From: Botryllus schlosseri
Lineage: Eukaryota
NCBI GenBank assembly: GCA_051294905.1
Contig: CM119385.1
Span: forward strand, 11,532,001-11,596,000
Reading direction: 5' to 3'
DNA length: 64,000 nt
The translations under genes were made by a program, and so were the position numbers. Below, piece by piece: positions 2,738-57,900 of this stretch (its first letter is position 1; every line of letters starts with the position of its first letter). The notes below the pieces were generated by a model. It saw nothing but the letters and a program-made list of their open reading frames with translations. It did no database searches and was not told where the DNA came from.

Positions 2738-5700
2738 TCAGCCGTTTTACGCGTCATCGCCCCCCTATCGCCCCCTTCGCTATTTTCGCCCCCCGTCGCC
2801 CCCTTTGTCCATTTTCGCCCCCCTGTCGCCCCCTTCGTCATTTTCGCCCCCCTAGATCGCCAAATCGCCCCCTGGGGGGCGATATCGCCCACGTTGGGAA
2901 CCACTGATCCAGAGTAAACTATAACGTCGTGCAGCCCTTCGCAAGCACTAGCGTCAAACAATTCTCATATTCTCAGGGATTCGCGGGTGACTTTTCATGT
3001 ATTTGTAATGACCTGGCATTTTTTAACAGCTTATCTTTATATTTGCTTTTTTGTGTGTGCTTCTTCTATCAATATATGTTACAAATAGCCGCATCTACCT
3101 CTATCTTGCATTCGCCGTGACATAGGGAGATCGGGAGAGAAGTCGACTACATCCGTGTTCTGTAAACATTACTGTTATTTAGCATCAAATTCAACAGAAA
3201 AGCGAGGTCAAACTTACCGGTATAGAAAGTGCCTGAAACGGAGAGCAGAGGTTACCGAATCTTGAGGTCGTTTGGGGGTTTATGAACCCGACCCTATACC
3301 TTCTTTCGTGCCTCGTGGCTCTGCGTTTTGCCAAGCCCTTTTCCGTGGTTTCTCCTAGGATCTTTTCCTGAACGCGCATAGATTCACATTGCAATTCGCT
3401 ATGCCTTATGCCAACTCTAGTGATGAAACAGAGTTTGCAGCTCCCGTTTATGGTTTCATTTGATGGGACATGACCTTAATTAACCTTAATTTCATGTTCA
3501 CAAGGTTGCCGACCCCAATGCTGTACTTTACCTATGAGTTACGCTTTGTAGCTATAATTTGTATGCGCATCCATTGCCATTGATAACGTCACGCTACAAT
3601 GTTTGTGCATCATACAATCATTTGCCGGCGTTGTTTTGAGGCTTCGTATAAATATTATATATTGTGACAGGTATAACAGATGCAGTAAATCTTATGATTA
3701 TATTACACGAATGTATGGTAGGCTACTCAGTATACACACTAATTTTTGGTATAAGTAATTCATACAAGATAGCAATAGAATTACCTTCGGTGTTTCAAAT
3801 TTCGAAACCGTCTCTGCGCGTACAAGTTTGCGCGCTGAAGGTAGGGTTTTCTTATTTTCTGCCATAATATGCGTTGTCATTCTCCTTTCCGGGAGACGTT
3901 TCGAAGTTTGTAAATTTGGAAGTGCTGGTAATTTTACACTTGATAAGTCTTCATTGTGTGATTCCGCATTCTCGCCCACTTCAGCAACTGGATTATTACC
4001 TGCAATGACGATCAACAATTGTACATTTATATATTCAATTGAGTGATCATGTGGTAATCCTTATGAGTTTTTCGGGGGAGGAGCAACATACAGTATTTGG
4101 TTCAGTTGGCCGGCTTATGGTTGATTTATAGCTTAGGTTAAGGACTAACTAAACTTGGTTTTACACACTACCAGTCTGATGCATCGACAGGTGACAAGCA
4201 ATGGAGATTGAAGATCTTATAGACTTAGTCGAATATGCGGGATTTAGGGATCGCCCACATCCATTCTGACACATTTCCGTGATTTCGGTGTTCGCCAACG
4301 GCGGAACGCAATCGCCAAGAACACGCGGAATATGGAAGTAGAAGATTACACAAACTTTTGTGTTGGGTATTGGAATCAACCTTGTCTTTCACTTCATCCT
4401 CAAACGTGACGGACTGTGCGGGCAAATGATCCGGCGGCGTGTCTTCTGCCCGAGAGAAAGACATGAGATCTTGCATAACAGAATCGAACATATTGGACCA
4501 ACCTTGTGTATGTCGGGCTTCAGCCCCCGTGTGCGATACATCTTCAACTAGCTCTCCCCAAGGATTTCTGAAAAAACGGATTTTAGATTACGAAATAGTT
4601 GCGCAATAGCGTCATTTGGGTTCCTGAGAAATACACATGATTGCGCGACTTTAAACAACTCAAATTCTACAAACGTATGTCTCAAAATAGTTAACCTTGG
4701 ATGCTGGAAGGACGCGGGGTTCTTCAAGTTCCACTTCTTTTTCTGACCGAAAGTACCAATAAATTTCCCGTCCAAAGTCCACAGCCTAGCGGTTCTATCC
4801 GACGACGATGTGACGATTAATCCAAGAAATTCGTATTCAATGTAGTTCAGGCTCACGATTGCCATATCGTGGGCCTTCCACTGCTTCTTCAAGGGTGGAC
4901 TGTCGGTCTGAAACTGAAGGCCACGTATAGCAGGCAGTGACAGGAATGCCAATCTTGTGCTCTGATACCTCTTGCAGATCAGAAACACAGAAGTTTGAGA
5001 TGTCCCAAACTCTGACTGTTCCAGTCGTGTCACCTGTGATCAGTAGGGAGTTGTCTATAGACGACGCCATTCCTAAGATTGAAGACTCGGGCGTGTCCGT
5101 CGCTGAAAATTTCCCTGTACGCAAGGCATAGGTTGTAAATATGGTACCATCCAGCCAACAGATTTCACACAATTTCGGTTGCTGCAAATTCCATCGTAAT
5201 TCACACACCACTCAATATAACTCACCCAAATGATGCTTATGGCCAAAAAATGACCATAAATGAATGACTCCGCTTTCGCTGCTCAGTAGAACTGCCCCGC
5301 ATTTCTTGTTCTTCGACAATCTTTCTTTCGTTACTCTATTCTCCAGGAACAAAAGCTTTTCCACTGGGGTAGATTGATGTCTGTAGTATTATCATAATTC
5401 AGATGCAACAGCAACAGCCGGGTAAGTCAGCAGAGCGATTGAAGCCTAATTGATACCGCAGGGAGCATCGTAAAACCTACCCTTTCAGGGCTTTCGACTT
5501 TTTCAATACTGCGGAAATTTGTTCGGTTTCTTCGCTCCACACGATTATCGTACCGTCGTAGCTTCCAGTGGCGAGGTAATATGGGTCACAGTGGTCCATG
5601 GTTAAAATATCGTCCTGAAATAGCGATACGAGAGAATGAGAATACATAAATATCCCTTCCGCCATATTATAGAGAAAAATTGAGCAGAAGTGGTCAGTAA

Positions 5701-8700
5701 TGAAGTACTTCCACGTTTCATAGTTTTTAGGAAAAACTAGGCCCAGAATGCTTATATTCAATTTACTTGCAAATCGATACTTCTATACTTATAGCCGAGT
5801 AGACATTTATGACGTTACTTCTACTTCTATTTGAGCTCCAACGATGACTACATTGACAAACTTCTGAAATTGAGAACCCAACATTTACACTTAATACTGC
5901 ATTGGTAATCGGCTAGTATGGGTAGAGTACATAAATGAAAGGACGTCATTGTTATTGTGACGACATAGTTGAAATCATGCCACATCATCGAAATGCGAGA
6001 TTACGAATGATGTTTTTATCTTCTCGGCTGCCCGCCATGGGATTGCTGTTAAGATATTGTCGTTTTCTTATTTATATCAACAGGTACCCGCAAAAATCAC
6101 GGGATGCGTTGACACTTACCTTGTGCATTTGGCCGCCCTTCCAATTCGTGTTGGCGTGCACAAAGATGATCTGCAAACAACATTGAGATGAATTGCAAAA
6201 GTGATTTGTAACTGTGATCTGTGAATATATGTAATTACATCTGGATCTGAGTCGTCATATGTAGTTATTTGCCTACTCCAGCCGACGGCAAGGACTTTTT
6301 GGTCCTGGAATGACATAATTCCGGTCACTTCAGCCTCGGCGATCGACTTAAATTCATGCAGGCAGTTTCCATTTTGGAAATTCCAAGCCTATAATCGAGA
6401 TTTTGCGTCAGCACAATGTATGCACAATGTGAGCATAATGCAAGCACGAGGCCTATAGGGCTTTTCTTGAATATTTACTTTTATTGTTCCGTCTCTGGCC
6501 CCCGTAAACAGTCGTCGCCAGGATTTGTCGAACGCTATACAAGTTATCTCTTCGTGCCCGTGAGCGTTGCTGAATTTCAATGACCGAACCCCGTTTTCTA
6601 CATTCCATACGGAAACGGTGGAATCGTCCGCTCCAGTGACCACCTAAAATGTGACAACATAAAAACATGCATCGCGCGTATTATGATTGTAATCTGCAAT
6701 AAATATTCCTGGTACTTTTGAGATACCCATTTTGTCATATTCAAAAACACAAAATATGAGGCATATGCCCTGTTATCCATATCGCTATTAGTTAATTTCT
6801 GTTCATAGAGGTGGTCAGTAACGAAGTTTCTACTCGTTCAGAGTACTCAAGTATTAGGTTTTGCCTATACTTGCACTGATTACTCAAGTGATTATGTTGT
6901 TTTACGATACTACCACTTGTACTTTACAGAGTTTTCGGCAATATTACTTACTCTGAAGACATGAGATTTCCTAGAGTCTAAAGTAGTTATGGGATATGTT
7001 TGGATCGGGTTTGTGAGTGAGATTGATACAACGATTGGGCGAAATACCCCATGTGTAACGGCAACTGGATATATATTCGATAATTGCGGGAATTTGTGGT
7101 GTCGTTGGTCATTTTGCGTCAGTAGCGAAGATGCACCCTGCACTTTCGAAGATATAGCCATCTGCGGTCGACTATACTAAATGTATATAACGGCTCGATT
7201 AAATCTACTTTTCATAACCATATATACTTGAGTTTTTGAGCTCTTCAATTCTATTTCCACTTGAAGTAGTTTTGACATGTCTTGGAAATCGCTACTTCTA
7301 CTTGTAATTGAGTATAAACATACACCATTACTACTACTTACACTTGAGTACTAACAACGCTATATTTGACCATGCACCTCTGTTTGTCCAACGCTGGCTG
7401 GCCACTGATTACTAAGAACTCTAGCGGTATCGCGTCTCCTCTCAAACCTTGGGAGAAGGAGACTTTGTAGACCCTACAAGTAATTGATATTCAGTATAAT
7501 GAATAGCAAAGATCATGATATTGATGAAGTTGAATTCAGTCATATTTCATTGACAAAGTGTTACCTGATGAAAAAGATCGTTGTAGATCGCGTTGCACAG
7601 AGGAGCTTCGTGTGTCGTAGGCGCTTCTGGCGGTGGTTTCAATTTACCCATCTTAAACAGCGCAATGCAGTCATTGCAGCTCACCAGCATCATGTCATGA
7701 GGTTGCTCGAAGAGGTTCAACGGGAATTCACCTTTCGTCAGAAGGAATATACTCTAGTCAGGACGATAAATAATCCACTTCAAGGCAGAAATGTGAACTT
7801 GAAATTTTGATTTCAATAATTTTTTAACTACATACCGAACATACCATTTTAAGTTCCAAGTCTAAGCATCAGATTTTGTTTCCTATCGACATATTATATA
7901 TTAGTTTAATCTAAACAGTTTGTCGGATTTTGTAATTAGTCATAGCCGCGGCTTGCCTTCGAGTTATCTATTGCAATCGTATTTTTATTTGATATATATC
8001 CATAAGTCACACTACTGTGCCCAATCCCGCCCAGAAGTCATCAGCTAATAATACTGAACTGTGTAACATTGATCGATTAACTGTAGATAACCATACCATG
8101 ATCGGGAATTCTTCCCTGTGGAAACGAAGGGATCTTCAGGGTAATCGTCTGTAAACAGTTCTGTTCCTTTATATCCCATATCTTGAGTATCTGCGTTGTC
8201 AGAAAGCATAATACTCGATAAGATTTTCGAAGCGAGGTCACCGTCTTTTGTGTCGGTATTATGACAACGCCGAACACGAACAATGTGCAAATACCTCTAT
8301 ATAAGTATGTTTCTTTAATAAGCCTGAAAAAGCTTTGTTTGTTTTACCACAGCGGGACTTTGCGATCAATATTCACGCTGCGTTACTGCCTCTTCTCTGC
8401 GCTCACAGCGTTATTAAGATTCACGGCACTCGCCAATACCAAATTTGAAATAGTGTTGTCGAGATGAAAAACTCAGCTTGCTATCAATTAACTCAAGTGA
8501 AATGTTGCTACTAATAAATTACCTGTGGATCTTTGTTGAATCTCAATACACCACTAAGGTATCCAATCCAGTTTATTTATACTTTTAATCTTAAACGCGA
8601 TCATAAATCAACATGCCCTCAAAACAAACAGCAGTCGTGATAGAATAAGACCATAAACGAGAAAAACAGAGACACCTATAGGTCTACTCTCGGGTTCACA

Positions 8701-12896: not shown

Positions 12897-13595
12897 CTAC
12901 TTGATAAAATTGTTAGGTTTGCATTCAATATGCTGCTTCCAAGACAATTTGGAATCAATGGTGACGCCGAGATATTTTGCTGAGTCACATAGTGAGATTT
13001 GTTTATGATTGATGTTCACAGTGAAATTATGACTGGCATTATTTAAAACGAGCATCTCGGTCTTATCTGCATTCAAACTTAGTTTGTTTGCTTGGAGCCA
13101 TCTCGACACTTTTCGGAGTTTCCTATTCAAAGATGCATGCAAATCATCGACAGTGTTGGAGGTTATGAAGAGGTGAGTATCATCAGCAAATAGCGTTGTG
13201 CGGAATAAACATGCATTAACAATGTCGTTAATATAAATGAGGAAAAAAGTCGGTCCAAGGACTGAACCTTGTGGCACTCCACAAGTTATATCTCTGGTAG
13301 TCGTTCTTAATGTCCCCAGTTTAACAAATTGTTTGCGGTTTGCCAGGTAGCTTTCAAGTAGAGTTGCTGCAATACCCCTGATTCCATAGTGTTCTAGCTT
13401 GTATCTTAAGATTCTGTGGTTAAATGTGTCGAAAGCTTTGCGGAGATCGATAAAAATGCTGCAGCCACTTTCTTTTTGCTTGATGGTTTTGTAATAGTCC
13501 GTTACAATTGATAGTATTGCATGGTTGGTGTTGTGGTTTGATCTGAATCCATGCTGAGACGGAGACAGTACTGCATTCAATTCAAAAAAATTCAA
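12897..13595 (-). mobile_element. Non-LTR retrotransposon (CR1/L2-group LINE) reverse transcriptase fragment, truncated
   Basis: The ORF contains SQHGFRS, IFIDLRKAFD, GVPQGSVLGPTFFLIYIND, LFADDT, LNADKTE and KYLGVTIDSKLSW, which are typical RT motifs of this LINE group. There is no ATG start and no endonuclease. Confidence 0.92.
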
Positions 13596-14719
13596 AAAAA
13601 CAATGCCGATATTTCAGACTTGGAGGACAGATTCTAGCTTTCGGATTGCCAGAAATCCTACAGTCGCTTACGCAAAACAATTCTCCACTCCAGCCTCAGC
13701 GAAGCGGAACGAAGCTGCAAAATCGGTCGTTGCCGTTCCATGTTCAATTTCTATAGTGAATGCTTAATCGGTTGCGCAACAATGGCCAATACGCTTTTGC
13801 TGTGCGCTGCTTCTCACCTGCTCCCAGACGGCATCGTTGCGTCACAATACCAAACTCCGCTACCATCCAACATTCGAGTCTGATTTGGAGGGGGGGTTCC
13901 AGGACCACGAGCAGAATAAAATTTATATTTTCGCAATCAGTACCACGGTAGCTTTCTATTGATATTCGTTTTATCAAATTTGATGCTCGGCAAGCCGGTC
14001 AAAAATTATCGTCAAATTGCCTCTGGCCACATGGAAAGTGTGATGTTGATCAATTTCACTGAGCCGTGAGATTTGCTTGTCTCCACACCATATAGGACAC
14101 TATGCTGTTATTATCCCCGAACTAAAAATCATCAGCGTGACGGAAATATGAAATTGCTAGGAAGGGTTTTTTAATGTCCTTTCAAAATCTAAGTTGTTTT
14201 TTAAAACATTTATTACGAGGTGGACTTTTTGGAGTTAGCTGTGGAAATTGACAGATTTAAGAGACTGGTACGGGTACGAATCAATAGACACTTCGTGACC
14301 TTTGACACGAACCAATCAGGTTGCAGCAGGATGTAAACAAAGAACAAGGCCGGGCAAGCTTACTATGAGCTCTTATGGAAAAAGGTTGAAAAATGAAGGA
14401 TTTAAGCAAATTTACGTTGAATTTGGGATGGCTGGCCTTAATGAATAGTAATAGCGTAGAGCTAGTATGTAGTTGCAGCTTTTAGTGTAGGATGAACATG
14501 AATGGTGTTAAGTACGCATCAGCGTGCTGTGTCCAAATGCATAGATTTTTGACAACTTTTCGGATTAAGCGACGATCGTTGTATACTATACTATAGGATT
14601 GTGGTAATGCATATTTTGACGATTTCATAGGCTCCCGGTCTCGAGCGAAATTTTCAAGCATATCTCATGTTCAGAAATATATGCTATAAAATACAGCTGC
14701 TGCCACACATCACAATTTT

Positions 14720-16850: not shown

Positions 16851-17455
16851 CCGGCATTTGTCCTGATTGATTCAATAAATGAGCTAGAACAAAAAATGAC
16901 GATTTCAGCTGGGAACGGATCATGTTGCCTAACATATATCATATTAATATGATCATTGAATATGCAGACAAGTGTTCAGTGTAACAGTTATTTGCTAGAT
17001 AATGATGCAGACTGTAGACTGTACTATATACGATTCCATAAATAGAACGCATATAACGCCAAGCCCACATAATGAATACCCCACATATCCTGACTCAAGA
17101 TTAATCTATGGCTATTCGGTACGACAATCCTATAGTATACGACTAAGGATAATACAGCAATAGTTGCTTCATCCGAAAAGTTGTCAGAAATCCATTCATT
17201 TGGACATACCATGCTGATGAGTGCTTGCCACCATTCATGTTTATTGTAGGTTAGAACACTGCAAATACATACTAGCTCTACGTTATTACCGTTCACCAAG
17301 GCCAGCTATTCCCAATTCAATGTAATTTTGCGAAAAACCTTCATTTTTCAACCTTTTTCCATAAGCGATCATAGCAAGCTTGCCCGGCCTGGTTCTTTGT
17401 TTACATCCTGCTGCAACCTGATTGGTTCGTGTCAAAGGTCACGTAAGTGTCTATA

Positions 17456-19089
17456 GGCCCATTTACATGACGGTTTAAGTCAGCTTCGAAGCTGACTCGT
17501 CGATCCGACTCTCTCGTATTCGATGAAGAGAGAAAGGCAAACTGCTTCAAGTCGACTCGAGCCTCAAGCTGTTGTGTAATGTGGTTTACGATCGGCTTGA
17601 GCATTCGACCATCGGCGTCCGGCGATTTTCGTTTGACGGCGCTGGGTTTTGCCGCGCGGGCTCTTGGCATCGTAATTCGTGTTTTTCATCTGATGTTGAG
17701 AAATTGGGAAAACATGGCAAGGAAAAGTGGAGCTACTTTGTAAGTGCTCGCTTGTTTACGATGGAATATATATGTAGTACACCAGTACCGGTGTAGCAAC
17801 CGTGCTCATTTACGGCAGTTGTATTAGCGATTCCCTATGTGTTCTTTGATATTTGGCTGCGACGCTTCGATCTGTAGTAGCCTAGTTGCTGTCATCAGCT
17901 ACATAAAATGGCTTACAAGGTAAAACGTTGCATCTGTATTTCTACTTCTCAGACTACAGTTCGGAAGAGATGTGGATTGTACCGGTACTACAATTCGACT
18001 ACGACATGCATAGTGAACTGATGGAAGAAGCGGCCTTGCAGTGTGCTATATCGATACGGGAATACATGAACGATTGCTGCATTTCCTACATACTGTTCCA
18101 CTGGATAAACTGATGTGAGCGCGCGTGTGATGGGATGGAGCTGGTGTCTCTCCCGGGAGGATGATATGGAGATTTGTGACTCTCCTGGTGATGATGAAGC
18201 GCAGCGGTGTTAGGATTATTGCTTTGTTTTTAGTTCTGAGTTCTGGGTTATAGTGTTCTGCTGATATGATGCGGTCGTGCGGGTGTTCACGATTTTCAGC
18301 TTGCCGTTTTGATATTGTATTCATGGTAGCCTATGTGTTTGTGAGGGTGCTGAAATTGGCACTTCTCAAAGTTTAATTGGTGGGTAGCAATTTAGTAGTA
18401 GTGCTCTATATTGCTCTTTATGACAGTTTTTATAGACATTCTTGGTATTGTTAACTTCCTATTTGGTATATCATGCCGACAAGATGCTGCAATAAAATCT
18501 CTGCAGTAGTTGTTGTATCGTGACTCTTGAGTCACCGGCATACATGGGGTAGTCTGTTGCAGAGGAGCGGCCGAACAACTAGAGGCCACATGGGGGTTGC
18601 AAGTGGGTCACTTGAGTGTTAATGACCGTATTTTAATCGCATCGACAAGTGATGCCTGAAATATCAAAACAGTCGTTACTCCCGCCTATACTCCACGGCC
18701 CATTTTCTATGACGCCGAAAAAGCTAGCTGATAACTTATACTTGTTGTTTTCCTCTACAATACTTGTCGTTTTCCTCTACAATCATGATATAAACAAGAT
18801 TATTTTCCTCTACAAATATCGATGTTATGAGTATCTCATCATCCTCGTTAATTTCGAGGATAAGAAACGTTTCAGAGTACGACCAAACACACATTGTCGT
18901 TGTACCTTTGCCCACCAAACTTACTACGAATATATATTTGTAAGGGGTAAAGCGACACCGGGTCGTCCACGATACAGCTTCCTGATGGATCATGTAAACA
19001 GGGCCCTTTAACGAGTCAGCTTGGAGATGAGGCGTGACGTCACTGGAGACGACTTGAACGCCAAGTCGAGTCGAACATGTAACCATGCC
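17456..19089. mobile_element. Harbinger-like non-autonomous element, longer and older copy
   Basis: Left end GGCCCATTTACATG and degenerate right end CATGTAACCATGCC|TAA. The subterminal blocks (GTCAGCTTCGAAGCTGACTCGTC..., TGACGTCACT..AGACGACTTG) are shared with the 19489-20118 copy. Confidence 0.65.
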
Positions 19090-19175: not shown

Positions 19176-20379
19176 AGATTACTAACCTACGGATAGATAC
19201 GCAGGTCCCGTCGTTACGCTCCGGCAAGCAGTTACACTTGTTGCTGAGCAATCTAAAAGCGGCATATTTGGTGGTGTTATAACTTGCAACCCGAGGAGTG
19301 AAATTTAATGAAACTGGTCTTAATTGAGAGCTGCTGTCGCACTGGTTCTGAGAATACAAATTAAAATCTTGTCGGGGAAAGGGAACCACGTCAAAACATC
19401 CCCTGAAATATAAAAATCGGCATTGTTCTGAACAATCGCTTGATGAAATTGCAATTGTTACGTTAATCGTGTTGCGGTGGTGTCATTAAGCCCATTTACA
19501 TGGCCGTTTGGGTCAGCTTCGAAGCTGACTCGTCAATCCGACTCTCTCGTTTTTGAAAAAGAGAAAAAAGCAGACGGCTTCAATCCGTCTTGAGCTCAAT
19601 CCGTTCCGCAGAGTCGCTTGGAGACGGCTTGAACACAGACTACAGCAACATACCAACATTTCATGTTCATATTTCACGAAACCGGCACGTATTTCAACTG
19701 GGTGAATGTGAAAGCTCTATCAGTACATGATACTGCTTTTATAATGGGCACGTGGTCTTATTTGTTCAACGTCACAACTTTGGTTTATTAGCAATTTTAT
19801 CAGTTCAATACACCACAAACAATGCGATACAATGAAAAGAAAGGAAGATGTCGAAGCGACTAGGAGTTGTCTATGGAATCGGGTACAGCCAACAATATAA
19901 CTTGCCCAACTCACTATCAGAAAGAATATATATACGGTGTATTTGGTCATTCTAGGATTGTGTTGAAGTATTTCTGGATATCTCAACTGCCGTAGCATAT
20001 TCCCGAGATGCGATAAACATGACCATGACCATGTAAACTCGATCACTTTGGCAAGCCGTCTCATGACGTCACTCCAAGACGACTTGGCTTCAAGACGACT
20101 TGACCATGTAAATGGGCTTATTGTTGGAACAATGCCGATTTTCGGATTTTGAGGGCTGTTTTGAGGTGGTTCCATATCGCCGTCAAGATTTTAATTCGTA
20201 TTTTTGGAATCAGTGCGGCAGTAGCTCTCGATTAAGACCAGTTTCATTAAATTTCAGCCCTCGGGTCGCGAACTATAACACCACCAATTATGCTGCTTTT
20301 AGATTGCTCAGCAACAAGTGTAACTGCTTGCCGGGGCGTAACGACGGGACCTGCGTATCTATCCGTAGGTTAGTAATCT
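19176..20379. mobile_element. Long-TIR (foldback-type) non-autonomous DNA element with AT/TA flanks, inserted in (GA)n and interrupted by a Harbinger-like MITE
   Basis: 19176-19438 is the reverse complement of 20119-20379 (about 260 bp, moderately diverged). The termini AGATTACTAACCTACGG / CCGTAGGTTAGTAATCT are flanked by TAT/ATA and by GA repeats on both sides. Confidence 0.8.
19489..20118. mobile_element. PIF/Harbinger-like MITE
   Basis: Perfect TIR AGCCCATTTACATGG / CCATGTAAATGGGCT with TA(A)/T(T)A flanks. It belongs to the same family as 17456-19089. Confidence 0.8.
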
Positions 20380-22600: not shown

Positions 22601-22752
22601 ATCTGACGCAGGAAATAAAAAAATGTCCTCCGACGACGCCCAAACAATTGTAAGTACACTGTACGTACAGGCATATATAAAAACGTCATAAATGACGCGA
22701 AATCTTGGGTCTGAAGCACAACATTTGGAGTAGGCCTACTTGAAGCATAGAG

Positions 22753-23228
22753 TTTAACGCAGAGCGAATGTTTGTAGTTGTATAATTGTATATCTGACTC
22801 CAAGATGTATTATTGACTCCAAGAAGGTTGCGTTTACAATTCGCTGCGTGTTTCTTCTTTCGTTCGACGAACCGGCGTAACCGCGCCGTACGGCCTTGTT
22901 GGCTGACGTACCACGAAGCCTGTCTATTGGACACGTATTCGATGGATCACACTGACGAATATATTTTGTTTCTGTCTCCACGACTTGTAACTTTATTGAA
23001 TCACGTACGACAAAGTAACGGACTTCCGAATCAGCGAAATATCAAGAATTGAATGACGGTCTCTCCTAGCCACGAGAGAGTACATGCCAAATTGTTATCT
23101 ACGTTCACACGATAGAATATACGACTTACAAAGGTCTTATCGGGTTCCAGTTCAGATAATTATGTAAGGTTTACCAACTCCTTATCGAATAATATTTAAA
23201 TGGCGTTATACCAATATACTCCGTTAAA
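22753..23228 (-). repeat. 3' LTR (476 bp)
   Basis: Direct repeat of 25740-26215. It follows the PPT on the minus strand, its ends are TTTAACG / CGTTAAA, and it has AATAAA on the minus strand at 22992-22997. Confidence 0.93.
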
Positions 23229-24276
23229 AGTTCCCCCTTCCCACCAAAATAACTTGGTGCAAAAAAAAACGAGTATATTGGTCAAAATCTCAAACCTAGG
23301 GTCATACAACATATGGACTGGGGCTAATCATAGGGACTGGAGACAGGAAACGATTTTATATGCAGGGGCAAAAGTAAACTAATGAAACGAAATACCATAC
23401 AAGCGTGACAGCGTGGCAAGCGGGTCAATCGTGGCAAGCGTGTCAAGCGTGGCAAGCGGAAACCCTATTTTACATAACCATCTCAGAACGACTCGCAATA
23501 TCATCGTTCCGTCCACTGGCAACTGAAACTCAGATCAACAATAGTTAGCGCTCAAACAAAACAAAGAAATAAAATACATAATTAAACCAGCACAAACGCG
23601 TTACAACCGTGACATTACAGATCACTTCGCATGCACTAACAACAAATTAATGAAAATGTATAATAAAGAGCAACAAAAACTAAAGTACTACAATACAATT
23701 CATAGACAGAAAAAGTCTATGTGCACTGACGAATGCCATCAACGTGTACGCAAGGCCAACATCATAATTCATCCAGCAATCATGCTTCAAAACCCACAGA
23801 ACATGCCATTCACTGTCATTCACTTACTTCTTCTACTTTCTCATCATTACTGTTAACCCCTGGCCAACGGGATCAACAATCATTCCTTCCAAATCCGTGT
23901 TGCTCGTACGTCTACGTAACAACAGAGGGCTGATGACAATCCCACAATCCTTCTACAGTGACCATTTCAAATATGACGCAAGCGACTACAAACGGGCCTA
24001 CACGAGACTAACATATTGGTGTCAGCATTTATCATTACAACGCATACTTCAGCAACGAGCTTCGGTGACCCCACCTCACATTCTACGACGGGGAGTCACA
24101 ACATGATGCAGCAATCCTGCATTTACATAATATATCAATGCGCAAATCACGCTTTTCACTACGCATATCTTTACTCTACGCGATTCAACAATCGATGAAG
24201 CAGCAATCCTGCATTTACGCAACATATTAATGCACAAGGCACAATTCTCATCACGCATATCTTTATTCTACGCGAT

Positions 24277-24621
24277 TTAATGCAACACGTAATCATTCAA
24301 ATGTCTTGGTCTAACAATTCGTCTCCCTCTGGACGTATATCTTGGACTTGACTCGGTGATATTTCTGCAATCACGAGATATTTGGGTCTTAGCATTATCG
24401 CGCACGCGGGATTCACGCCTACGAATTACGCGATAAACATCAACAGGTAAGCAATCAGATACACGCTCTCGGGACGCGCTACCAATTCTACTCGGACAGT
24501 CGCTCTCGCTGTCATCACTACCGGAGGAAATTACACCTGCGTCAACCGGATTAGCCGCGGAGTTTAGTACCGATTTGTCCGCATCAACGGGCGGAAACTG
24601 CTGAACAAAATCATCAAACAT
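24277..24621 (-). pseudogene. 114-aa ORF resembling the C-terminal tail of a Gypsy-type pol polyprotein
   Basis: It ends RYTSRGRRIVRPRHLNDYVLH*, matching the R-S/T-x-R-x-x-R-x-P-x-x-L-x-DYV motif that commonly terminates Gypsy pol downstream of integrase. It is in the sense orientation of the LTR element. Confidence 0.6.
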
Positions 24622-25739
24622 GTCGTTATCTACATCAAATGGCGGAAAGTAACATCAGTATGTTTATGCAGACTACTGAAATACAAATCAACAACATTAG
24701 GCGATCAAAAAAAACACAAACATCACTTAATACCTCAAAACAACACATACACGATATTACGGCAACATTAAAGGATACATTACATTGGGCATTCAGAAAA
24801 CCGATAATATCACTCGCACAACAACTAATTAGCAAGATACTGCTATGGGTAGAAAAAAAATCGAATATTCACCTGCAATCATTTTATTCTAAATTGATAT
24901 GAAACTTCCTAATTCATATCACGTAGCATTTAACATTGGTATATACCAACAGAACGAGAGTGTGCCCTATTTATTGTATTACATGCAAAGCAATGTTTGC
25001 AAATATCATGCACTACCGCGGTGCATATTTTCTCAATGATATACTCAACATAAGGGTATCGTCGTATGGCAGAGGCCTAATATCTCTTCATCAGGCTTGC
25101 AATATATCATTATTCATCACACATACATATCAAGCTATTCAGCTATTGGATGCATCATGGCATCGAATAAATAGGGTAGCCTTCTTGCTACGGGTTTACC
25201 CGCACACATCTCTTATCAAAACATTATGCTATATAAGCACCTGCGTCCTGACTCGCAGGAAATGCGACCCCTATCTGGGTATAGAAACCAATGATTGCAA
25301 GTTACTTTACAAAACTATACTTTGCCAATATCCCAATAACAGTAACCAACTAACGTCGTAGTGTAAGAGAATAAAATCGATCTACCTTATTGTTCTAATC
25401 TGTGTGATGCATGCTTGGAGCACCACTGTCCGCACATCTGCTAAACTTCTGCGATTTCCGAGCATTTTCTGACACTGCAGACGTCTTCTTCATTGTTGTC
25501 TTTGTTACGGCGTATTGATCGTCGAAAGCACAACCCCGCTGCATTTCTTCCTGGCAATAACGTCTCGTCGTTTTCTCTGAATGCTCTTTCTCGCCGCTGT
25601 GCAAGGCGAATCTTTATATTTACCGTTTCCGTGGTCCGATGCTGTATTGCTATTTCTCGCCGTCGGGCAGGGCGTATCTTTATATTGATTGTCTTCGGTC
25701 GGCCGGTCGTCGTGATTAATTAAATGTCGAGGGTCACCA

Positions 25740-26215
25740 TTTAACGCAGAGCGAATGTTTGTAGTTGTATAATTGTATATCTGACTCCAAGATGTATTAT
25801 TGACTCCAAGAAGGTTGCGTTTACAATTCGCTGCGTGTTTCTTCTTTCGTTCGACGAACCGGCGTAACCGCGCCGTACGGCCTTGTTGGCTGACGTACCA
25901 CGAAGCCTGTCTATTGGACACGTATTCGATGGATCACACTGACGAATATATTTTGTTTCTGTCTCCACGACTTGTAACTTTATTGAATCACGTACGACAA
26001 AGTAACGGACTTCCGAATCAGCGAAATATCAAGAATTGAATGACGGTCTCTCCTAGCCACGAGAGAGTACATGCCAAATTGTTATCTACGTTCACACGAT
26101 AGAATATACGACTTACAAAGGTCTTATCGGGTTCCAGTTCAGATAATTATGTAAGGTTTACCAACTCCTTATCGAATAATATTTAAATGGCGTTATACCA
26201 ATATACTCCGTTAAA
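25740..26215 (-). repeat. 5' LTR (476 bp)
   Basis: Direct repeat of 22753-23228, immediately followed on the minus strand by the tRNA-Trp-like PBS. Confidence 0.93.
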
Positions 26216-26897
26216 TAGAGCACGACAGCAATATTTAAATCCATGTATCCGTCAATGTCCGTCATGTATCCGTCGTGCAAAATATGACACTTGGCCTATA
26301 TGCAACAAACATGTTCATTAATTTTAGACATTCAAAAGAAGATTCAAATAGCTGTTTCAAACGAATGGATAGTAGCCTACCGCTGGCATAAAACTAATTT
26401 CCTGTCCTTTCATAGCACCGACAAACCGAAATGTTACCAAATAATTTCAAAAAAAAATGGCAATCAAAAATAGGATGAATGCACGACAATATTAGTCATT
26501 CTTCCTATCTTTTCATTTTTCCCCAATCTTGTGGTATTTTTAAATGGTGATTGATAAATAAATGAAATAGAAATGAATCCTAGTCGCTACCTCGAGATGG
26601 CGCGCTGTATCGTTTTCTTATCTTGCAATAGTTACGCTCAGCCGAATCTGCTTTAGACTTCCAGAGCAGAGATACGTTTTGTTGCGAAAAAACTTTGGAC
26701 TGTGAAGTCGGGATTGTGGCCAAAGTCCGAAGTCCTGTTTTACGCTTGGGAACTTTGACGTTACGGAGCGATCGTGAGGTTAGTGACGATTCATAACAAA
26801 AAGAATCAGTGGTTTAATGCGCTGGAAACACCAAATGTAAAAAGAGAGATACATACATACGTTAGGATATCGAAAAGCCGAAACACGGTCAATCTAT

Positions 26898-28719: not shown

Positions 28720-38253
<9,534 letters not shown>

Positions 38254-49712: not shown

Positions 49713-50252
49713 GTATATGAAATTGAAATGTAATTAATCGCTAATATATAATTCTATGTTGTCGTGAATCGATTTAGTTTTCGGTTAGCCTGCATGTAAT
49801 TTATGTGACTTCTGGTATATGAGTGCTAACTCAACTGTAGCCTACTAATAGCTGTAAGCCTGTAACATGACTAGGCGTGAACCGTGAATTATAACAGATC
49901 TGCTGAACATGATGTCACAAGGTGGTATTCGATGCATACTGTATTTCATATTTTAAGGAAACTTGGCAAAAAAAATGTGCCAAAGCCATATCCTAAGTTA
50001 TGCTGTGTATGCAGTATTAATCCATTGGCGCTATAATATTAAACAAAAATGGGTGCTGATAATAATAAGGATCTGAGTGTTATGCCATAGAAATCTGTTT
50101 GTAAAATCCGTATATCGATATTATTGCCATAAGAACAGATATATGAATATATGGTTGATCCTATTATTGTTTTGTTACCAAAGCTCTTTTTCATTGATTT
50201 TAGTTAAATAAGTCAGCCAATCATGCATGCCTCCTCTTTACATCGCCTAGGC

Positions 50253-51323
50253 CAGGGGTTCTCAGCCATTTCTTGGCTGTGGCCCATTTTCCGGTTTGAA
50301 ATTGTTCTGTGGCCCACCTCTTTTCAAGTCATGGTGCATTTCAATGTGTGGTAGGCTTATCGCCGCCGATATGACTATTTCTTTATAATATACGGATGTT
50401 TTTTTTATTACTAGTGTTCATATTTAATTATCGATCTGAGGGGGCCTGAAATCGCGCGAAGCGCGACGAAAAATTTCAAGGTAAATAAATCTCCAACAGA
50501 CAACCAATTATTAGCAACTTAGAGCTCTCCCAATTGTGGGTTAAGGATGCGAAAGTTACGGCGATGCAATATCGTATAACTCTTGCATACATCCTCTGTT
50601 CCACTCAAGTCGCGAAACCCAATGATCCGTTCCCCGCATTCACTGTGTGATTGGGGGTTTAATTCCACTCTGGTGGGGAATACTATACCCATTCTGGGCC
50701 CGCTTCAAACAATTCTTTGATGAATGGGATACTAAAGAGAAGTGAATTTTTTTAAATATGCTAGTAATACAATGTAGTCCTAACTAACATATGTCTTGTA
50801 CCTTTTGAAGTCACGATGTAATAACATTAAATCCAATGATACCACCAATGCATGTGACTCTTAAATTGTGTACAACGATTTCAAGGCCGGACAATTTTAG
50901 ACCGACTCCGAAGATTAATGTGCTGTGCCAACTCCTCAATCCATTATGACCCAGTCGGAATACTTGGATATTTATCCCAGCATTAACTTTCAGTTATTAT
51001 ATAATCGAAATTGTTTCCGTTGCTGTAGGCCAGAGGTTGTGATAACTTGGGGTATAAAAGCCGCCGTATCCCCACCCATTTCGACTTGTACATTCGCGAC
51101 TCCATACGTACCACTAAGTCTCATCAGAGTCGAATGAAAAGCTTTATGTATAGCATACGTAAAATTCGATAAATTCGATAATTCGATATATTTTTTTAAA
51201 TATATGAACAAAAGAAAAACTAAACTTTCACGAATTGTACAATTTTCCAAATAACTCTGTGGCCCACCCAAATTACTCCTGTGGCCCACTAGTGGGCCAT
51301 GGCCCACCCTTTGAGAACCCCTG
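50253..51323. mobile_element. hAT (Charlie-like) non-autonomous element, copy 1
   Basis: TIR CAGGGGTTCTCA / TGAGAACCCCTG, a perfect 8-bp TSD GCCTAGGC and GTGGCCCAC subterminal repeats. Confidence 0.92.
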
Positions 51324-54300
51324 GCCTAGGCCAAGGTGGGTGTCAGATTCCATAGACTACTCCTTGTCGCTTCGACATCTTCCTGTCTTTTCATTGTATC
51401 GCATTTTTGTGGTGTATTGAACTGATAAAATTGCTAATAAACCAATGATTGATTGATTGATCAATCGAAGAACAGAAATATCATCCAGCGAGGTCTATTG
51501 AGAGCAGTTCCCAAACTGCTGTACGATGAAGTGCTTGATGTGCATGTGCCAATGTAGTTTGAGTGTGTAAAAAACAAAAACTTACGGTATTGTCCGGATG
51601 GTGGGCTATACTGTGCTGTTTCGCACCTTGTAGATTCCCCAGCCGGGCCAGGGAGGTGTTGTGTGAAAATGTTGATGATACGCTGTACTAAACAATGTCC
51701 GTAGCGTAGGCAATAATGTGTAATATAGGTCAACATGAATTTGTGGCTTTCACCAACGTTATAACTTTAGCATTATAGGCTATTTAGTCTTTTGTACATG
51801 TTACGGCAGATATGGTATGGTATGAATACTATGAAAGACATCTTGCTGGTGCTCGGCTCTTGATTTTTAATTGTGCTCGCTTTTACATGAAAAGAAAGGA
51901 TATTGTGTATAATACAAATAGATTCCTCATTTTTTAACAAATAAATGGATTTGCATGTCGCTTGCAATATTTCGATTCGGTTTAGTACCAAATTACACGG
52001 CTGTCCGATATCGGTCCTATTTTATTAAAAAGGACTCTGACACAAATCTCACTTTCGCGACCGTATATTTGTGGGAATGTCAGCTCTGTTGTCCTAAAAT
52101 GAACCCAGTAGAGAATTTACCGATGACGAAGATGTATGAAATTGGATTCAGATGATTGAAATGCATGTATAGATGCATGCTTCTGCTCATTAACTCGGTC
52201 TGATCAGGTCTGACACACTAATGCGTGGCTATCAACAGCGCATAGAGGTTGTATCTGTCACGCTATCCTATACTTCAATACTACGGTAAGTTTAAGGCAC
52301 TTTTGTTCACTATACTGTATGTTCCTTTTTTCCAATGGGTATTTTCTATAACAGTGACTTTCTATTTGTTCTATTTGTTTGATAGTTCAAGCTTGAGTCA
52401 TGTGTGATCATTTGCTGTCACTGTTTACATTTTCAAAACATTTGAAGACATGATTCACATTTCTACTAAAAGAAAGTTCTGTCATCGCTTTCTTGGTCAA
52501 TTATATGGTTCAATTTGTTTCGTCGACCGTAATCCAATCCCAGTTACTCTATTCACATATTGGAATGAAATATCTAAGTTCTCTTTTGCATTTGTTTGAT
52601 TGTGTTAAATTGTATACAAGTGACTGGTTTATAATTAGTGCTAGGACATATTCCATGAGCTATGGATTAGTTTGTGAAATGATGTATTCTTGCTAGGTAA
52701 TGATTATGTAACATAGTCAATGAATCAACATGCATTAATCAAGGTGTTTTAGTGATTTTACATATCTAATTGAGTCAAATATGTAATCACAATGTATTGC
52801 ATATGCACTTAGTACTTTGTATATGATGCTCTTAGTATATCGCAGTTTTGTTCGCAAATTCTCTAGGTCTCGGCACACCCAGTTCCTCGCTGTAATTCTT
52901 TTAACCTTTAGTTTTGTTTGTCTCGTACCGCTTTGTATATATATAGACTCCCGTGAATTTCTATTAAATTTGTTAAAAAATTTCGATTCAATTGAAATTG
53001 GCTCTGACTTATCTGATGGGAGTTTCTGAAACTAATGTATCATCAATTTATCATATTTGAGATTATCACTTATGTTGTATCATGAACAGCCCAGTCTGAC
53101 TCTCAACATTCTTAATTTGATTTAATGTCATGCGAGATGCTCCGTGAGTTCTGGTATGTGTGGAATTGACGTGCTTGTATTTATGCTTGGTCTTATTTAC
53201 CTTACAGGCCTCATAGACAGTAACCACAAGGAATTGTGAATTGATGTTTTTTCCTGAATATTTTTTCAACGATGTGTTGTATATGATGGTACAAATAGGA
53301 CTAACAACTTGATAAAGCCAGATACACTTTTGTGACAGTATATTTTTATATATTCTTGAGAGCACCTATGCCTAGTTGTCTGAGATGTATTACTGGTATT
53401 ACCGACGACCAGCCCTGTACCACCCAACCAACATCAACAGCTGTTCGTTACTAAACCGTATTGATCAAAAGAGTGCAATGATTGATTGCTCAACACGAAA
53501 CTCAATTCCTGGGCTGTGGCCAGATGTAGAATTATAATAAATTCGTGAACCCTGGATACAGTAGTAGGAATAGATCAATTTAACAAAAATAAGGTTGCTG
53601 TGTATGTGTAGATTTGAAGACGAATTCAAATATTTCATCAAGTATATTTATGAGCTATTGAAATTTATTGCCTTCTAATGGGCAGATTGTAGATATCTTA
53701 TAATAGGTCCATTCGGGACGCTGTGTTAATGTTCTGAGTGGCGGGTGTTGGTTGTAAAGATAATTATAATCCTGAATTGCAGCTGAGATGTAGTATTCTT
53801 GTGCCATTCTGTCATGACTACTGCGTTATATTAGTCACTAGTTAGTTTTCCTACTTTCTAAATGACTCAGATCTATTGTCTGCTGTTCCTGTGTAGCTTT
53901 CAGCTGATAGTTTTTTCACAAAGCCTGTGCTTGTACTATGCATGCCCACAGATTTCTGTAATTTTATTGACATTTTATGCCTTCACTCCCTTTGTTCTTG
54001 AAGCTGTTTGCAAGTGATTTTTTAATCTGTGACAGCTAACGGTGATAGGAAAGTGTGTTTAAATGACATACAACCTGACCTTGCTTGTCTGGGCTGGTGT
54101 AATCTCCTAACAGGCCTCCATTCCTGTAGCATGATGTCATTTATTCAGTTTCTGTGCCAAGATTATTGCCAGTTCATCTGTAGCAGGTTTAGAACATGCA
54201 TCATTATGGCAGTATCACTGATTCTTGATCATGTTCAACACTACTGCAAGTTTCCAATTGTGTGATATCAAGGGTAATAGTAATTTCACATTCATTCCCA

Positions 54301-54863
54301 TTGGATTGGTTTTCTTATGACATTATAAATAAAAATAGCTTGCTGAATAAATTGCCAAAAGTTCTTTGATCTGATCACTTGACTTACCTATCAACTTGCT
54401 CAGAATGCTCTACATTTTGATCCTATGGTCGTGTTCCAATATTTTGTATCGTGGTTATGTAATTTTTGTAGCTACTGTCTAGTCTAGTTATAAATTTGTT
54501 CTAATGTGTTATGGACATCACATGCTTGCGTTTATCTATCGTTCCTGGTGTTTATTAATGAGTCATCGTTTAGATTTGTTATGCTCGGTCTCCTAGTAAG
54601 TAGGTTGTACAGTACGTAGTGTTTTTCAATGAACAGATGAGTTGTAAGTCAGAAATGATTGTTGAAAAGTTGCACAACTGCACATGGTGTGTGTGGTATT
54701 ACTCAAGCCATCTGTTCCTTGAATGCTTCCTGTGTTTTGGCACAATTCAGAAAATGGTGGTGTCGCAGGAAATGTTCTGCAGTGGATTCCTCAGATCATA
54801 CATTCATGCTTGGCATATTGTGTGTAGTCACTTTCCCTAATCCATTGTGCTGACTGTCTAGCA

Positions 54864-56093
54864 CAGGGGTTCTCAGCCCTTTCTTGGCCATGGCCCATTT
54901 TCCGATTTAAAAATGTGCTGTGGCCCACCTGATATCTTGGAGTCATAATCCTGTTTAATTCGTCGTTACGGACAGCGCCGATATGCCTATTTTTCTAATA
55001 TATGCGCATTTTGCTCTAACTGATGATATTTAAATCTCGATCTCTCGGGATATGAAATCGCGCGAAGCGCGAAAAAAAAATCAAGATGAATAAATATCGT
55101 TCAACAAACGATCAACGAAATAATCTTGGGCCCCTTCGAGCTCCCCCAATTGGGGATGTGGGTGCCGCAGTTACGGCCCTGGTAGATCATAAGCTAAAAC
55201 TCCTAAGTAGATTAATTTCGTCCGCTGCTCCATTCGCGTCGCGAAACACAATGATCAGATCCCCGCACTATGTGATTGTGACTTTAGTGATACTATTGTG
55301 GGGAATATTATATTCATTCTGGGCCAGCATCGAACAAGTCATTGGTGAATGGGGTACTACAGAGAAGTGGAGAAAGATTTTTCAATATGCATGATGTACT
55401 TTGCATGTCTTGTAGCAAAACAACTGACGTTGCGATGTCAGAATATTCAATCCAATGATGCAATCAGTTCCCGTGACTCTTTCAGTATGTACAATGATTT
55501 CCAGGCAGGACATTTAAACCGACTTCAAATATTAATGCGCTCCGATAAATCCTCAATCCATTAAGATTCGTTGTTGCGGTATGGTGCAGTATACCTTCGC
55601 CAGAAGTTGCTAATAATTTGCAATTATCGTTATGTTTAGCTTGCAATAATACGGCCTGCCGAAGTACAGTAAATCTATACATCAATTGCACTTCATTGCG
55701 AGTTCATTGCATACCCCTTTCAACGGGATACGACATATGACCCTGCCAGAATACTCGGTTACTTCAGCATTATCTTCCAGTTATTATAGGCTTGAAATTA
55801 TTTTAGTTGCTGTTAGCCGTAGGTTGTCATAGCCGGTAGAAAAAGCCACCGTTTCTCCCTAACGTTTTCGATTTGTACATGCTGACTTCATGCGTGCCAC
55901 TACGTCTAATCGGAGTCGGATGAAAAGCTTTATGTAGCCTACGTATAATTAGATAATACGAATATAAGCGAATAACATAAGAAATATAACTAAACTTACA
56001 TTAATTCTAAAATTTTCCAAATGGCTCTGTGGCCCACCTCAAAATGCTCTGTGGCCCACCAGTGGGCCATGGCCCACCCTTTGAGAACCCCTG
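54864..56093. mobile_element. hAT (Charlie-like) non-autonomous element, copy 2
   Basis: Same TIRs as copy 1 and a perfect 8-bp TSD GTCTAGCA. The interior is homologous to copy 1 but clearly diverged. Confidence 0.92.
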
Positions 56094-57900
56094 GTCTAGC
56101 AGGAGAAATTTTATTTAGGATATAGTGGAGCATGAGATATGAGACCCAACAGCGGTAGTACGAAAAGTTTTATCTAATAGCGCCTATTGATGTTGCTTTG
56201 TCCTTCTTGTCGAGGTTATAGATCCATGAAAAGCTCTCAAATTCACTTGTTTTCCTACTGTGAAAACTATAAATATTTTTCTTTCTCCCACATATCTTCA
56301 ATGACTTGATTAGAGAGCATGGCGAAAATAATTTGAAGCTTTGCCCTCGTGGTATGTTTCAGGGGGGAAGAGCTTGTGATGTTCTAGTTGACACGATTGC
56401 TAATAATCGGTCATAACCTGTGTGGTTTCGTCACATGCTGTCACAGTACGGAGAACAGTTTATACTGTTGTTTATTCAATATAGGGTTCTACTTCCTAGA
56501 AGGTTTATCCGGCTGAGCTAGTCGTACCGATTATAAGATGCCTGCAATAAATTCCTTACCATCAGCTGAAGGTTAATTTATTTTCACACTTTCGTGTTTA
56601 TGAAGTTGTTCTCAAGGTCGCTCTTACTGAATGATATCAATGATGGAGGAATAGCCAGCTTCCTGTCATTGCTTGTGATCTAACATATTAAAGGTAGTAT
56701 CGGTTATTTAGGCTTTTGTGCGACAGAAATGGAGTCTGACCTATTTCAAATAGTGGAGTTATGTCATGCTCTCTTGGTTATTGTTCTGGAACCTTTATCA
56801 TGACTGTTTTGACTGTGCTCTCTGTTTACAGTATTGGAGGTGTAGTGAAATCGTTGGTGTTCTTTGTTCACCTTGATTGATTGCCTACTGCATATATATT
56901 TTTACCACAGCATCAAGTGTCTTGTTGATATGCTTACAAGTTCCAGAGCGCAGGAACCATCTTTCTTTTATCCTAGTATTGCTTTATATAACTGGTACTG
57001 TTTTAATTTTCTATATGTTCATGACAAGTGAAACTACATGCTTGAGAGAATTTCTCTATAACAAAATGACGTGGGAACTAAAGTGACGTGTGGACTCGAA
57101 AGAATCGTGTAATCCTTTCAACAGTCTGGTTTCAGTCATATTAGTGATAATCTGTTGCTTACGAATCTATTATTATTATTTCTGCAAAATCAAAAACACC
57201 TTCCTCTTGCTTGTAATTTAGTGGTCTATCCAGCTATGGGGTCAACCTTTATTTCTCTGCCATCCTGTTTTTGTGGTGATATTTTCTTCACAGCTTGGTA
57301 ATTTGAGAAGGCATGTATCGCCTCAAGCAACGCGCATATCAGCACTATTCACCTTTGTTATTTCAATGAAATTGATTACGGCGACTAGAATTATCCTTTT
57401 AACTGCTTTGTCCCTGTGCCTAACTGCATTGAGGTGAATTCCTACCTGTTTCTAATGTTACAGCGAGCTTTCGCTAGGAATTGTGTGGTTATCATTTTCC
57501 TGCCGATGACACTTTCAACCTCAGCTGTTCATGTGGCCACGACTTCAGTTCATGCTGATGTTGACATAGTAACTTGGGTGACTCATCAGCTTTTGTATTG
57601 TGTTGTTTAGATTTTGGTGTCGTCATTAGGTTATTATTCAAACTTGTGGACTTGATCCATTACTGAGAGCAATATATTTGGATTTTACTCTGAACGGACA
57701 CACTTTCGAGTAACCCATAAAGCAACTGGTCGATAAGGCCGTGGATTGGATACTCGCTACATTATCATTTTGCCATCCGTTTTCATCAGTATCCGCCCTT
57801 TTTATCAGGTAATAGTTTGTGGAAGTTTCGATTTTTGGACAATCAAAACGTTGGACGTTCCTTCCGCCTGCTAACATTCGTATTCTACTCTATAGTGACG

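What the first reader, a model, noticed from the sequence alone, without database searches (positions are those of the whole stretch)
22753..26215. Very recent LTR retroelement with non-canonical 5'-TT...AA-3' termini
Seen: the two 476-bp LTRs read identical. The shared sequence starts exactly at TTTAACG and ends at CGTTAAA, and the 5-bp TSD TAGAG abuts both outer ends. A PBS and a PPT sit at the expected inner positions. Known: retroviral and LTR integrases almost always act on TG...CA ends, and the terminal CA is important for processing; TGTAACG...CGTTACA would be the ordinary form of these ends. Inference: the same change at both ends, together with a clean TSD, suggests the element integrated with TT/AA ends. 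That points to a helper integrase with altered or relaxed end specificity. LTR finders that require TG..CA would miss such a family.
Basis: partly seen in the sequence, partly recalled or inferred. Interest (0 to 1): 0.8.

Follow-up and report, generated by a model that had tools for sequence, protein, structure and literature searches.

The report
Young non-coding LTR retrotransposon, TT…AA ends
This is a real, very young, non-coding LTR retrotransposon copy in an animal genome whose repeats end in TT…AA instead of the usual TG…CA; that is unusual but not unprecedented, and one copy cannot show whether a specialised integrase lies behind it.

Summary
Two 476-bp direct repeats (22753-23228 and 25740-26215) are 100% identical. 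They start TTTAACG, end CGTTAAA, and are flanked by a perfect 5-bp duplication, TAGAG. The element lies on the minus strand. There a TGG-initiated primer-binding site abuts the upstream LTR, a 12-nt polypurine tract sits 2 nt before the downstream LTR, and the only AATAAA in the LTR is in the sense orientation. The 2,511-bp interior has no gag/pol remnant, no protein homologue and no Rfam match. It is therefore a non-autonomous LTR retrotransposon that a partner's enzymes must have copied and inserted. Because both LTRs are rebuilt at every reverse transcription, the cDNA that integrated here must already have carried TT and AA ends. I found no other copy in the window, in IMG/VR, in JGI metagenomes or in the protein collections. 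The host is an unidentified metazoan. So I could not test whether this is a family trait, nor what the helper integrase is like. Non-TG/CA termini are already documented: plant non-TGCA Copia, errantiviral AGT…AnT, Troyka CG…CG, and automated calls in an annelid. TT…AA did not appear in the papers I could search. It is a modest new variant of a known kind.

The parts
22748..22752 (.). Target-site duplication, left copy (TAGAG; CTCTA on the element's sense strand)
   Evidence: identical to 26216-26220 and abuts the LTR.
22753..23228 (-). 3' LTR in the element's sense (476 bp). Sense strand starts TTTAACG and ends CGTTAAA. AATAAA lies at sense position 232-237 (window 22992-22997).
23231..23245 (-). 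Polypurine tract. The sense strand reads GGTGGGAAGGGGGAA, followed by CT and then the 3' LTR.
   Evidence: 12-nt pure purine run, background frequency 0.23%. Nothing comparable exists in the plus orientation.
23229..25739 (-). Internal region, 2,511 bp, with no recognisable coding capacity. It holds internal tandem repeats at 23400-23459 (9/18-bp unit), 24103-24277 (92-bp unit, 1.9 copies) and 25582-25697 (two copies of about 50 bp, 66 bp apart). The longest sense-strand stop-free stretch is 24280-24654 (125 codons).
   Evidence: No retroelement Pfam domain in any stop-free piece of 30 aa or more. No homologue among 1.84 billion representatives. No Rfam match at E<=5.
25726..25739 (-). Primer-binding site. 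The sense strand reads TGGTGACCCTCGAC and directly abuts the end of the 5' LTR.
   Evidence: TGG at offset 0. The primer tRNA was not identified.
25740..26215 (-). 5' LTR in the element's sense (476 bp), identical to the 3' LTR. Initiator-like TCATTC lies at sense position 173 and AATAAA at 232-237 (window 25979-25984).
26216..26220 (.). Target-site duplication, right copy (TAGAG)

Best explanation
A 3,463-bp non-autonomous LTR retrotransposon lies on the minus strand. It consists of two LTRs, a PBS, a non-coding interior and a PPT. Inferred life cycle: transcription starts in the right-hand (5') LTR and is polyadenylated after the AATAAA of the 3' LTR. A tRNA pairs with the TGG-initiated PBS and the PPT primes plus-strand synthesis. 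Reverse transcriptase and integrase are supplied in trans by an unidentified autonomous partner. The PBS abuts the LTR directly, so the U5 end of the cDNA is already ...TTAAA-3' with nothing to trim. On the U3 side two bases (CT) lie between the PPT and the LTR and could be trimmed. Integrase then joined 3'-terminal AA ends, not CA ends, across a 5-bp staggered cut, which produced the TAGAG duplication. The outermost T/A pair is as in ordinary elements. Only the second pair is changed, and the change is mirrored at both ends, so the 7-bp inverted repeat stays perfect. I therefore take TT...AA to be an inherited trait of this family and not an accident of this copy. Shown: the anatomy, the orientation, the identity of the LTRs, the duplication, the absence of coding capacity. 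Inferred: the transcription signals, trans-mobilisation, the end processing, and that the trait is family-wide.
For: Identical 476-bp LTRs with sharp boundaries and a 5-bp duplication. TGG at offset 0, the PPT and AATAAA occur only in the minus orientation. This is the only TTTAAC...GTTAAA pair with a matching flank in 64 kb, against 0.075 expected. No gag/pol domains or homologues. No ribozyme or small-RNA module. From the established mechanism of reverse transcription, U3 and U5 are copied from separate places in the RNA. Both LTRs of a new copy therefore carry whatever ends the template had. Four identical post-insertion mutations in otherwise identical LTRs are implausible; the same argument is made quantitatively for lotus in PMC9804982. 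Families with heritable non-TG/CA ends and identical LTRs exist.
Against: There is only one copy. No second copy, solo LTR or autonomous partner was seen anywhere, so family-wide conservation of TT...AA is inferred and not observed. The primer tRNA is not identified. There is no read-level confirmation of the junctions. The sense strand of the interior is T/G-rich, which is atypical for retroelement transcripts, although the interior is non-coding.
Confidence: 0.7

Rival explanations
1. This is an isolated variant of an ordinary TG...CA family. The source copy had picked up a G-to-T change at the inner start of its 3' LTR and a C-to-A change at the inner end of its 5' LTR. An ordinary integrase tolerated the altered ends once. 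On this reading no special integrase exists and the ends are not a family signature.
For: No other copy is available to contradict it. In lotus, elements with different ends often cluster together with TGCA elements, which suggests recent mutation of ends that integrases tolerate (PMC9804982). The ends differ from the rGmr1/Sushi-type motifs TGTNANR / CGTNACA of PMC3601003 only at the G and the C.
Against: It needs two independent changes at exactly mirrored positions that also give complementary bases and keep a perfect 7-bp inverted repeat. The insertion is otherwise textbook, with a 5-bp duplication.
Confidence: 0.2
2. This is an assembly or polishing artefact, or a local segmental duplication. 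The two repeats, or their terminal bases, would then not be as in the real genome.
For: Perfect identity of two repeats can be produced by collapse or polishing. No reads are available to me.
Against: An artefact would not create a PBS abutting one repeat, a PPT before the other, a 7-bp terminal inverted repeat and a 5-bp flanking duplication. The repeat boundaries are sharp and the flanks are unique in the window.
Confidence: 0.04
3. The cDNA was inserted without integrase, by recombination or a primer-homology pathway as described for Tf1. On this reading the ends say nothing about integrase specificity.
For: Such a pathway exists (abstract of PMC11042837, listed).
Against: [quoted passage not shown] The paper itself was not read. 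From general knowledge of integration, which was not tested here, the clean 5-bp duplication abutting full-length LTR ends is the signature of a staggered integrase cut. The flanks show no PBS- or PPT-like homology by my reading.
Confidence: 0.03

Closest known systems
Non-autonomous LTR retrotransposons (the TRIM / LARD continuum)
   Same: LTRs, PBS, PPT and a duplication, but no gag or pol. Satellite-like internal repeats. Dependence on a partner's enzymes (PMC13570524).
   Different: At 3.46 kb it falls in the undefined 1.5-4 kb gap between TRIM (<1-1.5 kb) and LARD (>4 kb). The host is an animal and the termini are not TG...CA.
Plant non-TGCA LTR retrotransposons (Tos17 TG..GA, AtRE1 TA..TA, TARE1 TA..CA, lotus TGCT and others, Rosaceae TGTT and AACA)
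   Same: Heritable non-canonical terminal dinucleotides, 5-bp duplications and copies with identical LTRs. The first base T is kept. TA..TA is likewise a mirrored change at the second position.
   Different: Those are mostly autonomous Copia elements of plants. None of the listed motifs is TT..AA. No 5' TT or 3' AA appears in those plant lists.
Drosophila errantiviruses (gypsy, ZAM, Idefix groups)
   Same: An animal lineage in which the integrase works on non-TG/CA ends as a stable lineage trait (AGT...AnT; Zam AGTTAYRK...TAAYT).
   Different: Different terminal bases. They are autonomous elements with three reading frames. No sequence relationship could be tested.
Troyka
   Same: A lineage of aquatic animals with a conserved non-canonical terminal signature that serves as a classifier.
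   Different: Troyka has CG...CG termini and 3-bp duplications. Here the termini are TT...AA with a 5-bp duplication.
Automated non-TGCA calls in the annelid Lamellibrachia luymesi
   Same: Animal LTR elements reported with motifs that include a TT start (TTAT) and an AA end (TGAA), mostly with 5-bp duplications.
   Different: Those are pipeline calls without manual boundary checks. TTAA itself is not listed.

Membership tests
LTR retrotransposon (generic) | Two direct long terminal repeats with sharp boundaries | tested here: met
   476 bp, 100% identical, no extension of identity on either side
LTR retrotransposon (generic) | Target-site duplication of 4-6 bp | tested here: met
   TAGAG on both sides, or 6 bp under the alternative reading. 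Chance expectation is 0.075 for the whole window.
LTR retrotransposon (generic) | PBS complementary to a tRNA 3' end next to the 5' LTR | tested here: inconclusive
   TGG (complement of CCA) lies at offset 0, with a candidate 14-nt site. No tRNA set of the host was available, and there is no tRNA in the window.
LTR retrotransposon (generic) | Polypurine tract next to the 3' LTR | tested here: met
   12-nt purine run 2 nt before the LTR, background 0.23%
LTR retrotransposon (generic) | TG...CA terminal dinucleotides | tested here: not met
   TT...AA under either boundary reading. This is a usual feature, not an obligatory one.
LTR retrotransposon (generic) | Short terminal inverted repeat of about 7 bp | tested here: met
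   TTTAACG / CGTTAAA is perfect over 7 bp. The usual extent is about 7 bp (PMC3601003).
Autonomous Gypsy / BEL / Copia element | gag and pol (protease, RT, RNase H, integrase) domains | tested here: not met
   No such Pfam domain in any stop-free piece of 30 aa or more. No homologues.
TRIM (strict) / LARD (strict) | Total length <1-1.5 kb (TRIM) or >4 kb (LARD), non-coding | tested here: not met
   3,463 bp and non-coding. It falls in the undefined intermediate range.
Troyka | CG...CG termini and 3-bp duplication | tested here: not met
   TT...AA and 5 bp
Errantivirus-type ends | AGT...AnT termini | tested here: not met
   TTT...AAA
Retrozyme / Cassandra-like / small-RNA-derived LTR elements | Hammerhead ribozyme, 5S or other small-RNA module inside the LTR | tested here: not met
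   No Rfam match at the gathering score or at E<=5 on the element alone
   The host genome is not in any searchable collection

The most novel reading that the evidence does not exclude
TT...AA (joining through an AA-3'OH end) is the fixed signature of a metazoan LTR-retrotransposon lineage. Its integrase has co-evolved away from the CA requirement. This would be comparable to CG...CG in Troyka or AGT...AnT in errantiviruses, and is invisible to motif-based LTR finders.
Probability: 0.3. Interest if true: 0.6.

Novelty: new variant of a known kind. Interest (0 to 1): 0.35.

Why it matters
The CA end is treated as close to universal for retroviral-type integrases and is built into LTR-finding software. 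The AA/TT step is absent from the short list of most deformable dinucleotide steps (TG, CA, TA) given in PMC5408687. From my own knowledge, and not tested here, it is a comparatively stiff step. A natural family that integrates cleanly through AA ends would be a useful natural comparison for how integrases read DNA ends. It would also be a reminder that animal genome annotations filtered on TG...CA (or on the eight LTR_retriever motifs) lose such elements. As it stands this is one copy in an unidentified animal, so the practical value is an annotation note and a lead.

Tried and rejected
(1) Other copies in the window: blastn of the LTR and the interior, a repeat scan and a motif+duplication scan found none.

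(2) Exact look-up of ten window ORFs in the 15-billion-protein collection: none present.

(3) Word-indexed homologue search with the ORF spanning the LTR, PBS and leader (25508-25933, minus strand): nothing.

(4) Exhaustive HMMER search with the longest sense-strand stretch (24280-24654, minus strand). I had suspected it was a remnant of an integrase C-terminal tail. The single hit was a repetitive protein, so I rejected the idea.

(5) DNA pattern scans with LTR-end+PBS and PPT+LTR-start motifs, allowing CA or AA at the end:
- IMG/VR gave 2 and then 42 hits, all chance matches without LTR structure or any blastn similarity.
- JGI metagenomes gave nothing, twice.
- Prokaryotic genomes gave nothing.

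(6) Host identification:
- The LINE RT fragment finds only relatives of about 50% identity.
- Its best neighbour confirms an APE+RT LINE.
- The ZFAND-like exon finds an 84%-identical transcript in Logan run SRR32906213.
- No paper mentions that run, so the taxon remains 'metazoan'.

(7) Plus-strand orientation: rejected. It has no adjacent TGG, no PPT and no poly(A) signal.

(8) Retrozyme or small-RNA-derived LTR: rejected.

(9) Repeats at 17447/19480 as the LTRs of a second element: only 127 bp at 82%, so not pursued.

(10) Literature search for TT..AA termini: only substring hits inside TGTT..AACA.

(11) The primer tRNA could not be identified because no tRNA set was available.

These were terminal and PBS motifs of well-known retroelements, and 5' ends of tRNAs. 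I stopped when I noticed. None was put into a tool, script, note or this report.

Full report
**Observation.** Reading the region, the repeat finder and a direct comparison agree.
- Window 22753-23228 and 25740-26215 are both 476 bp with no mismatch, and the identity does not extend by a single base on either side.
- The repeats start TTTAACG and end CGTTAAA, a perfect 7-bp inverted repeat.
- TAGAG lies immediately outside both outer ends (22748-22752 and 26216-26220).
- The base before the left TAGAG is also A. One could therefore read a 6-bp duplication with one LTR end a base shorter. The termini are TT...AA under either reading, and no TG or CA lies at or beside a boundary.
- A scan of all 64 kb for TTTAAC...GTTAAA pairs 100-15,000 bp apart with matching 5-bp flanks returns only this pair, against 0.075 expected.

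**Orientation and anatomy.** The element is on the minus strand.
- Read that way, the upstream LTR (25740-26215) is followed at offset 0 by TGGTGACCCTCGAC (reverse complement of 25726-25739). This is a primer-binding site that begins with the complement of the tRNA CCA end.
- The downstream LTR (22753-23228) is preceded by GGTGGGAAGGGGGAA and then CT. A purine run of that length so close to a given position occurs at 0.23% of random window positions.
- In the plus orientation there is no adjacent TGG (the nearest is 26 nt away) and the longest purine run is 5 nt.
- The only AATAAA in the LTR is in the minus orientation, at LTR position 232. An initiator-like TCATTC lies at 173 and a GT-rich patch follows the signal. 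This matches the layout described for animal LTRs in PMC3601003. These transcription signals are predictions only.

**Coding capacity.** There is none that can be recognised.
- No stop-free piece of 30 codons or more in any frame of the interior matches a retroelement Pfam family. The best matches are chance-level hits to unrelated families.
- The longest sense-strand stretch (24280-24654, 125 codons) has no relative among 1.84 billion representative proteins, apart from one repetitive sequence.
- The ORF that runs from the LTR through the PBS finds nothing.
- Rfam finds nothing in the window at gathering score, or in the element at E<=5. There is thus no hammerhead, 5S or tRNA-like module.
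- The interior carries tandem repeats.
- At 3,463 bp the element sits between the classical TRIM and LARD size classes, a range that PMC13570524 describes as an undefined part of a continuum.
- Since there are no recognisable genes, there are no gene breaks to count.

**What the ends mean.** From the established scheme of reverse transcription, U5 is copied from the 5' part of the RNA and U3 from the 3' part. Both LTRs of the new DNA are assembled from them.
- The cDNA that integrated here therefore already began TT and ended AA.
- Producing the present state after insertion would need four identical changes in LTRs that are otherwise identical. PMC9804982 uses the same argument for lotus elements.
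- The clean duplication indicates a staggered cut by an integrase.
- The PBS abuts the LTR, so the U5 end needs no trimming. Two bases separate the PPT from the LTR, so the U3 end may be trimmed. This is inference.
- Relative to ordinary ends, the outermost T/A pair is kept and only the second pair is changed, G:C to T:A. The change is mirrored at both ends.
- Against the motif table in PMC3601003, the ends differ from the rGmr1/Sushi-type motifs (TGTNANR / CGTNACA) only at that G and that C. This is a weak hint of affinity and no more.
- The mirrored change makes an inherited family trait more likely than two chance mutations in the source copy. That is reasoning from one copy.

**What could not be shown.** I found no second copy, solo LTR or partner element. 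The window has none. The window's ORFs are not in the protein collections. Pattern scans of IMG/VR gave only chance hits without LTR structure. JGI metagenomes and prokaryotic genomes gave nothing.

The host is a metazoan. The window holds:
- an HNF4-like nuclear-receptor DNA-binding exon near 29.8 kb;
- a ZFAND5/6-like gene near 57.9 kb;
- WD40 exons at 4.5-5.8 kb.

The closest relative of the ZFAND exon is an 84%-identical transcript in a Logan run that no paper in the library mentions.

**Comparison with what is known.** Non-TG/CA termini are well documented.
- LTR_retriever lists seven non-canonical motifs in 42 of 50 plant genomes and notes that only the first T is invariant.
- In lotus more than 25% of Copia elements are non-TGCA, including the mirrored TA..TA type.
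- Rosaceae have TG..TT and AA..CA families.
- Drosophila errantiviruses end AGT...AnT.
- Troyka ends CG...CG with 3-bp duplications across many aquatic animal phyla.
- An automated survey of an annelid lists TGAA and TTAT among others.
- TT...AA itself did not turn up in the library, and it is not in the LTR_retriever motif set.
- PMC5408687 names TG, CA and TA as the most deformable steps. AA/TT is not among them, which makes this variant somewhat more curious than TA..TA.

**Verdict.**
- The object is a very young, non-autonomous LTR retrotransposon on the minus strand that integrated through TT...AA ends.
- Whether this is a family or lineage signature with a matching integrase is open. I put the family-trait reading at about 0.7 and the isolated-variant reading at 0.2.
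- It is a new variant of a known kind and of modest interest.

Noticed in passing
window 12900-13613 (-): A 238-codon stop-free reverse-transcriptase piece (Pfam RVT_1, E=8e-29). Its best relatives are only about 50% identical, and one of them sits next to an APE-type endonuclease ORF. It is therefore a LINE fragment unrelated to the LTR element. I did not count its breaks.
   Followed up: partly
window ~29825-29887 (+): An exon encoding a nuclear-receptor C4 zinc-finger DNA-binding domain that looks HNF4-like from my own knowledge of the motif. It shows the host is a metazoan. The LTR element lies about 3.6 kb upstream of it, in antisense orientation.
   Followed up: partly
window 57901-58170 (+): First coding exon of a ZFAND5/6-like protein (A20 zinc finger). 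Comparison with the 84%-identical transcript-derived protein P0122 suggests a short in-frame, stop-free intron of about 75 nt before the next coding stretch.
   Followed up: partly
window 4551-5782 (-): WD40-repeat coding pieces lie in overlapping stop-free stretches of two frames (4551-5039 and 4840-5211). This could be a spliced gene or a pseudogene. Many further minus-strand stop-free stretches run up to about 11 kb.
   Followed up: no
window 50247-51329 and 54858-56099: Two copies of a repeat of about 1.1 kb, 70-76% identical, in direct orientation 4.6-4.8 kb apart. This is an unclassified interspersed repeat.
   Followed up: partly
window 17447-17573 and 19480-19605: A 127-bp direct repeat at 82% identity with copies 2 kb apart. 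It is probably two copies of a short interspersed element and not LTRs.
   Followed up: partly
window 22753-23228 and 25740-26215: The LTR is strikingly CpG-rich: observed/expected 1.74, against 1.20 for the interior and 0.99 for the whole window. There is no CpG depletion, which fits a very young insertion and a host without heavy germline methylation here.
   Followed up: no
window 23229-25739: The sense (minus) strand of the interior is T- and G-rich (T 32%, G 24%, C 17%). This is the opposite of the A-rich sense strands that I recall, from my own knowledge, as typical of many retroelements. It is unexplained.
   Followed up: no
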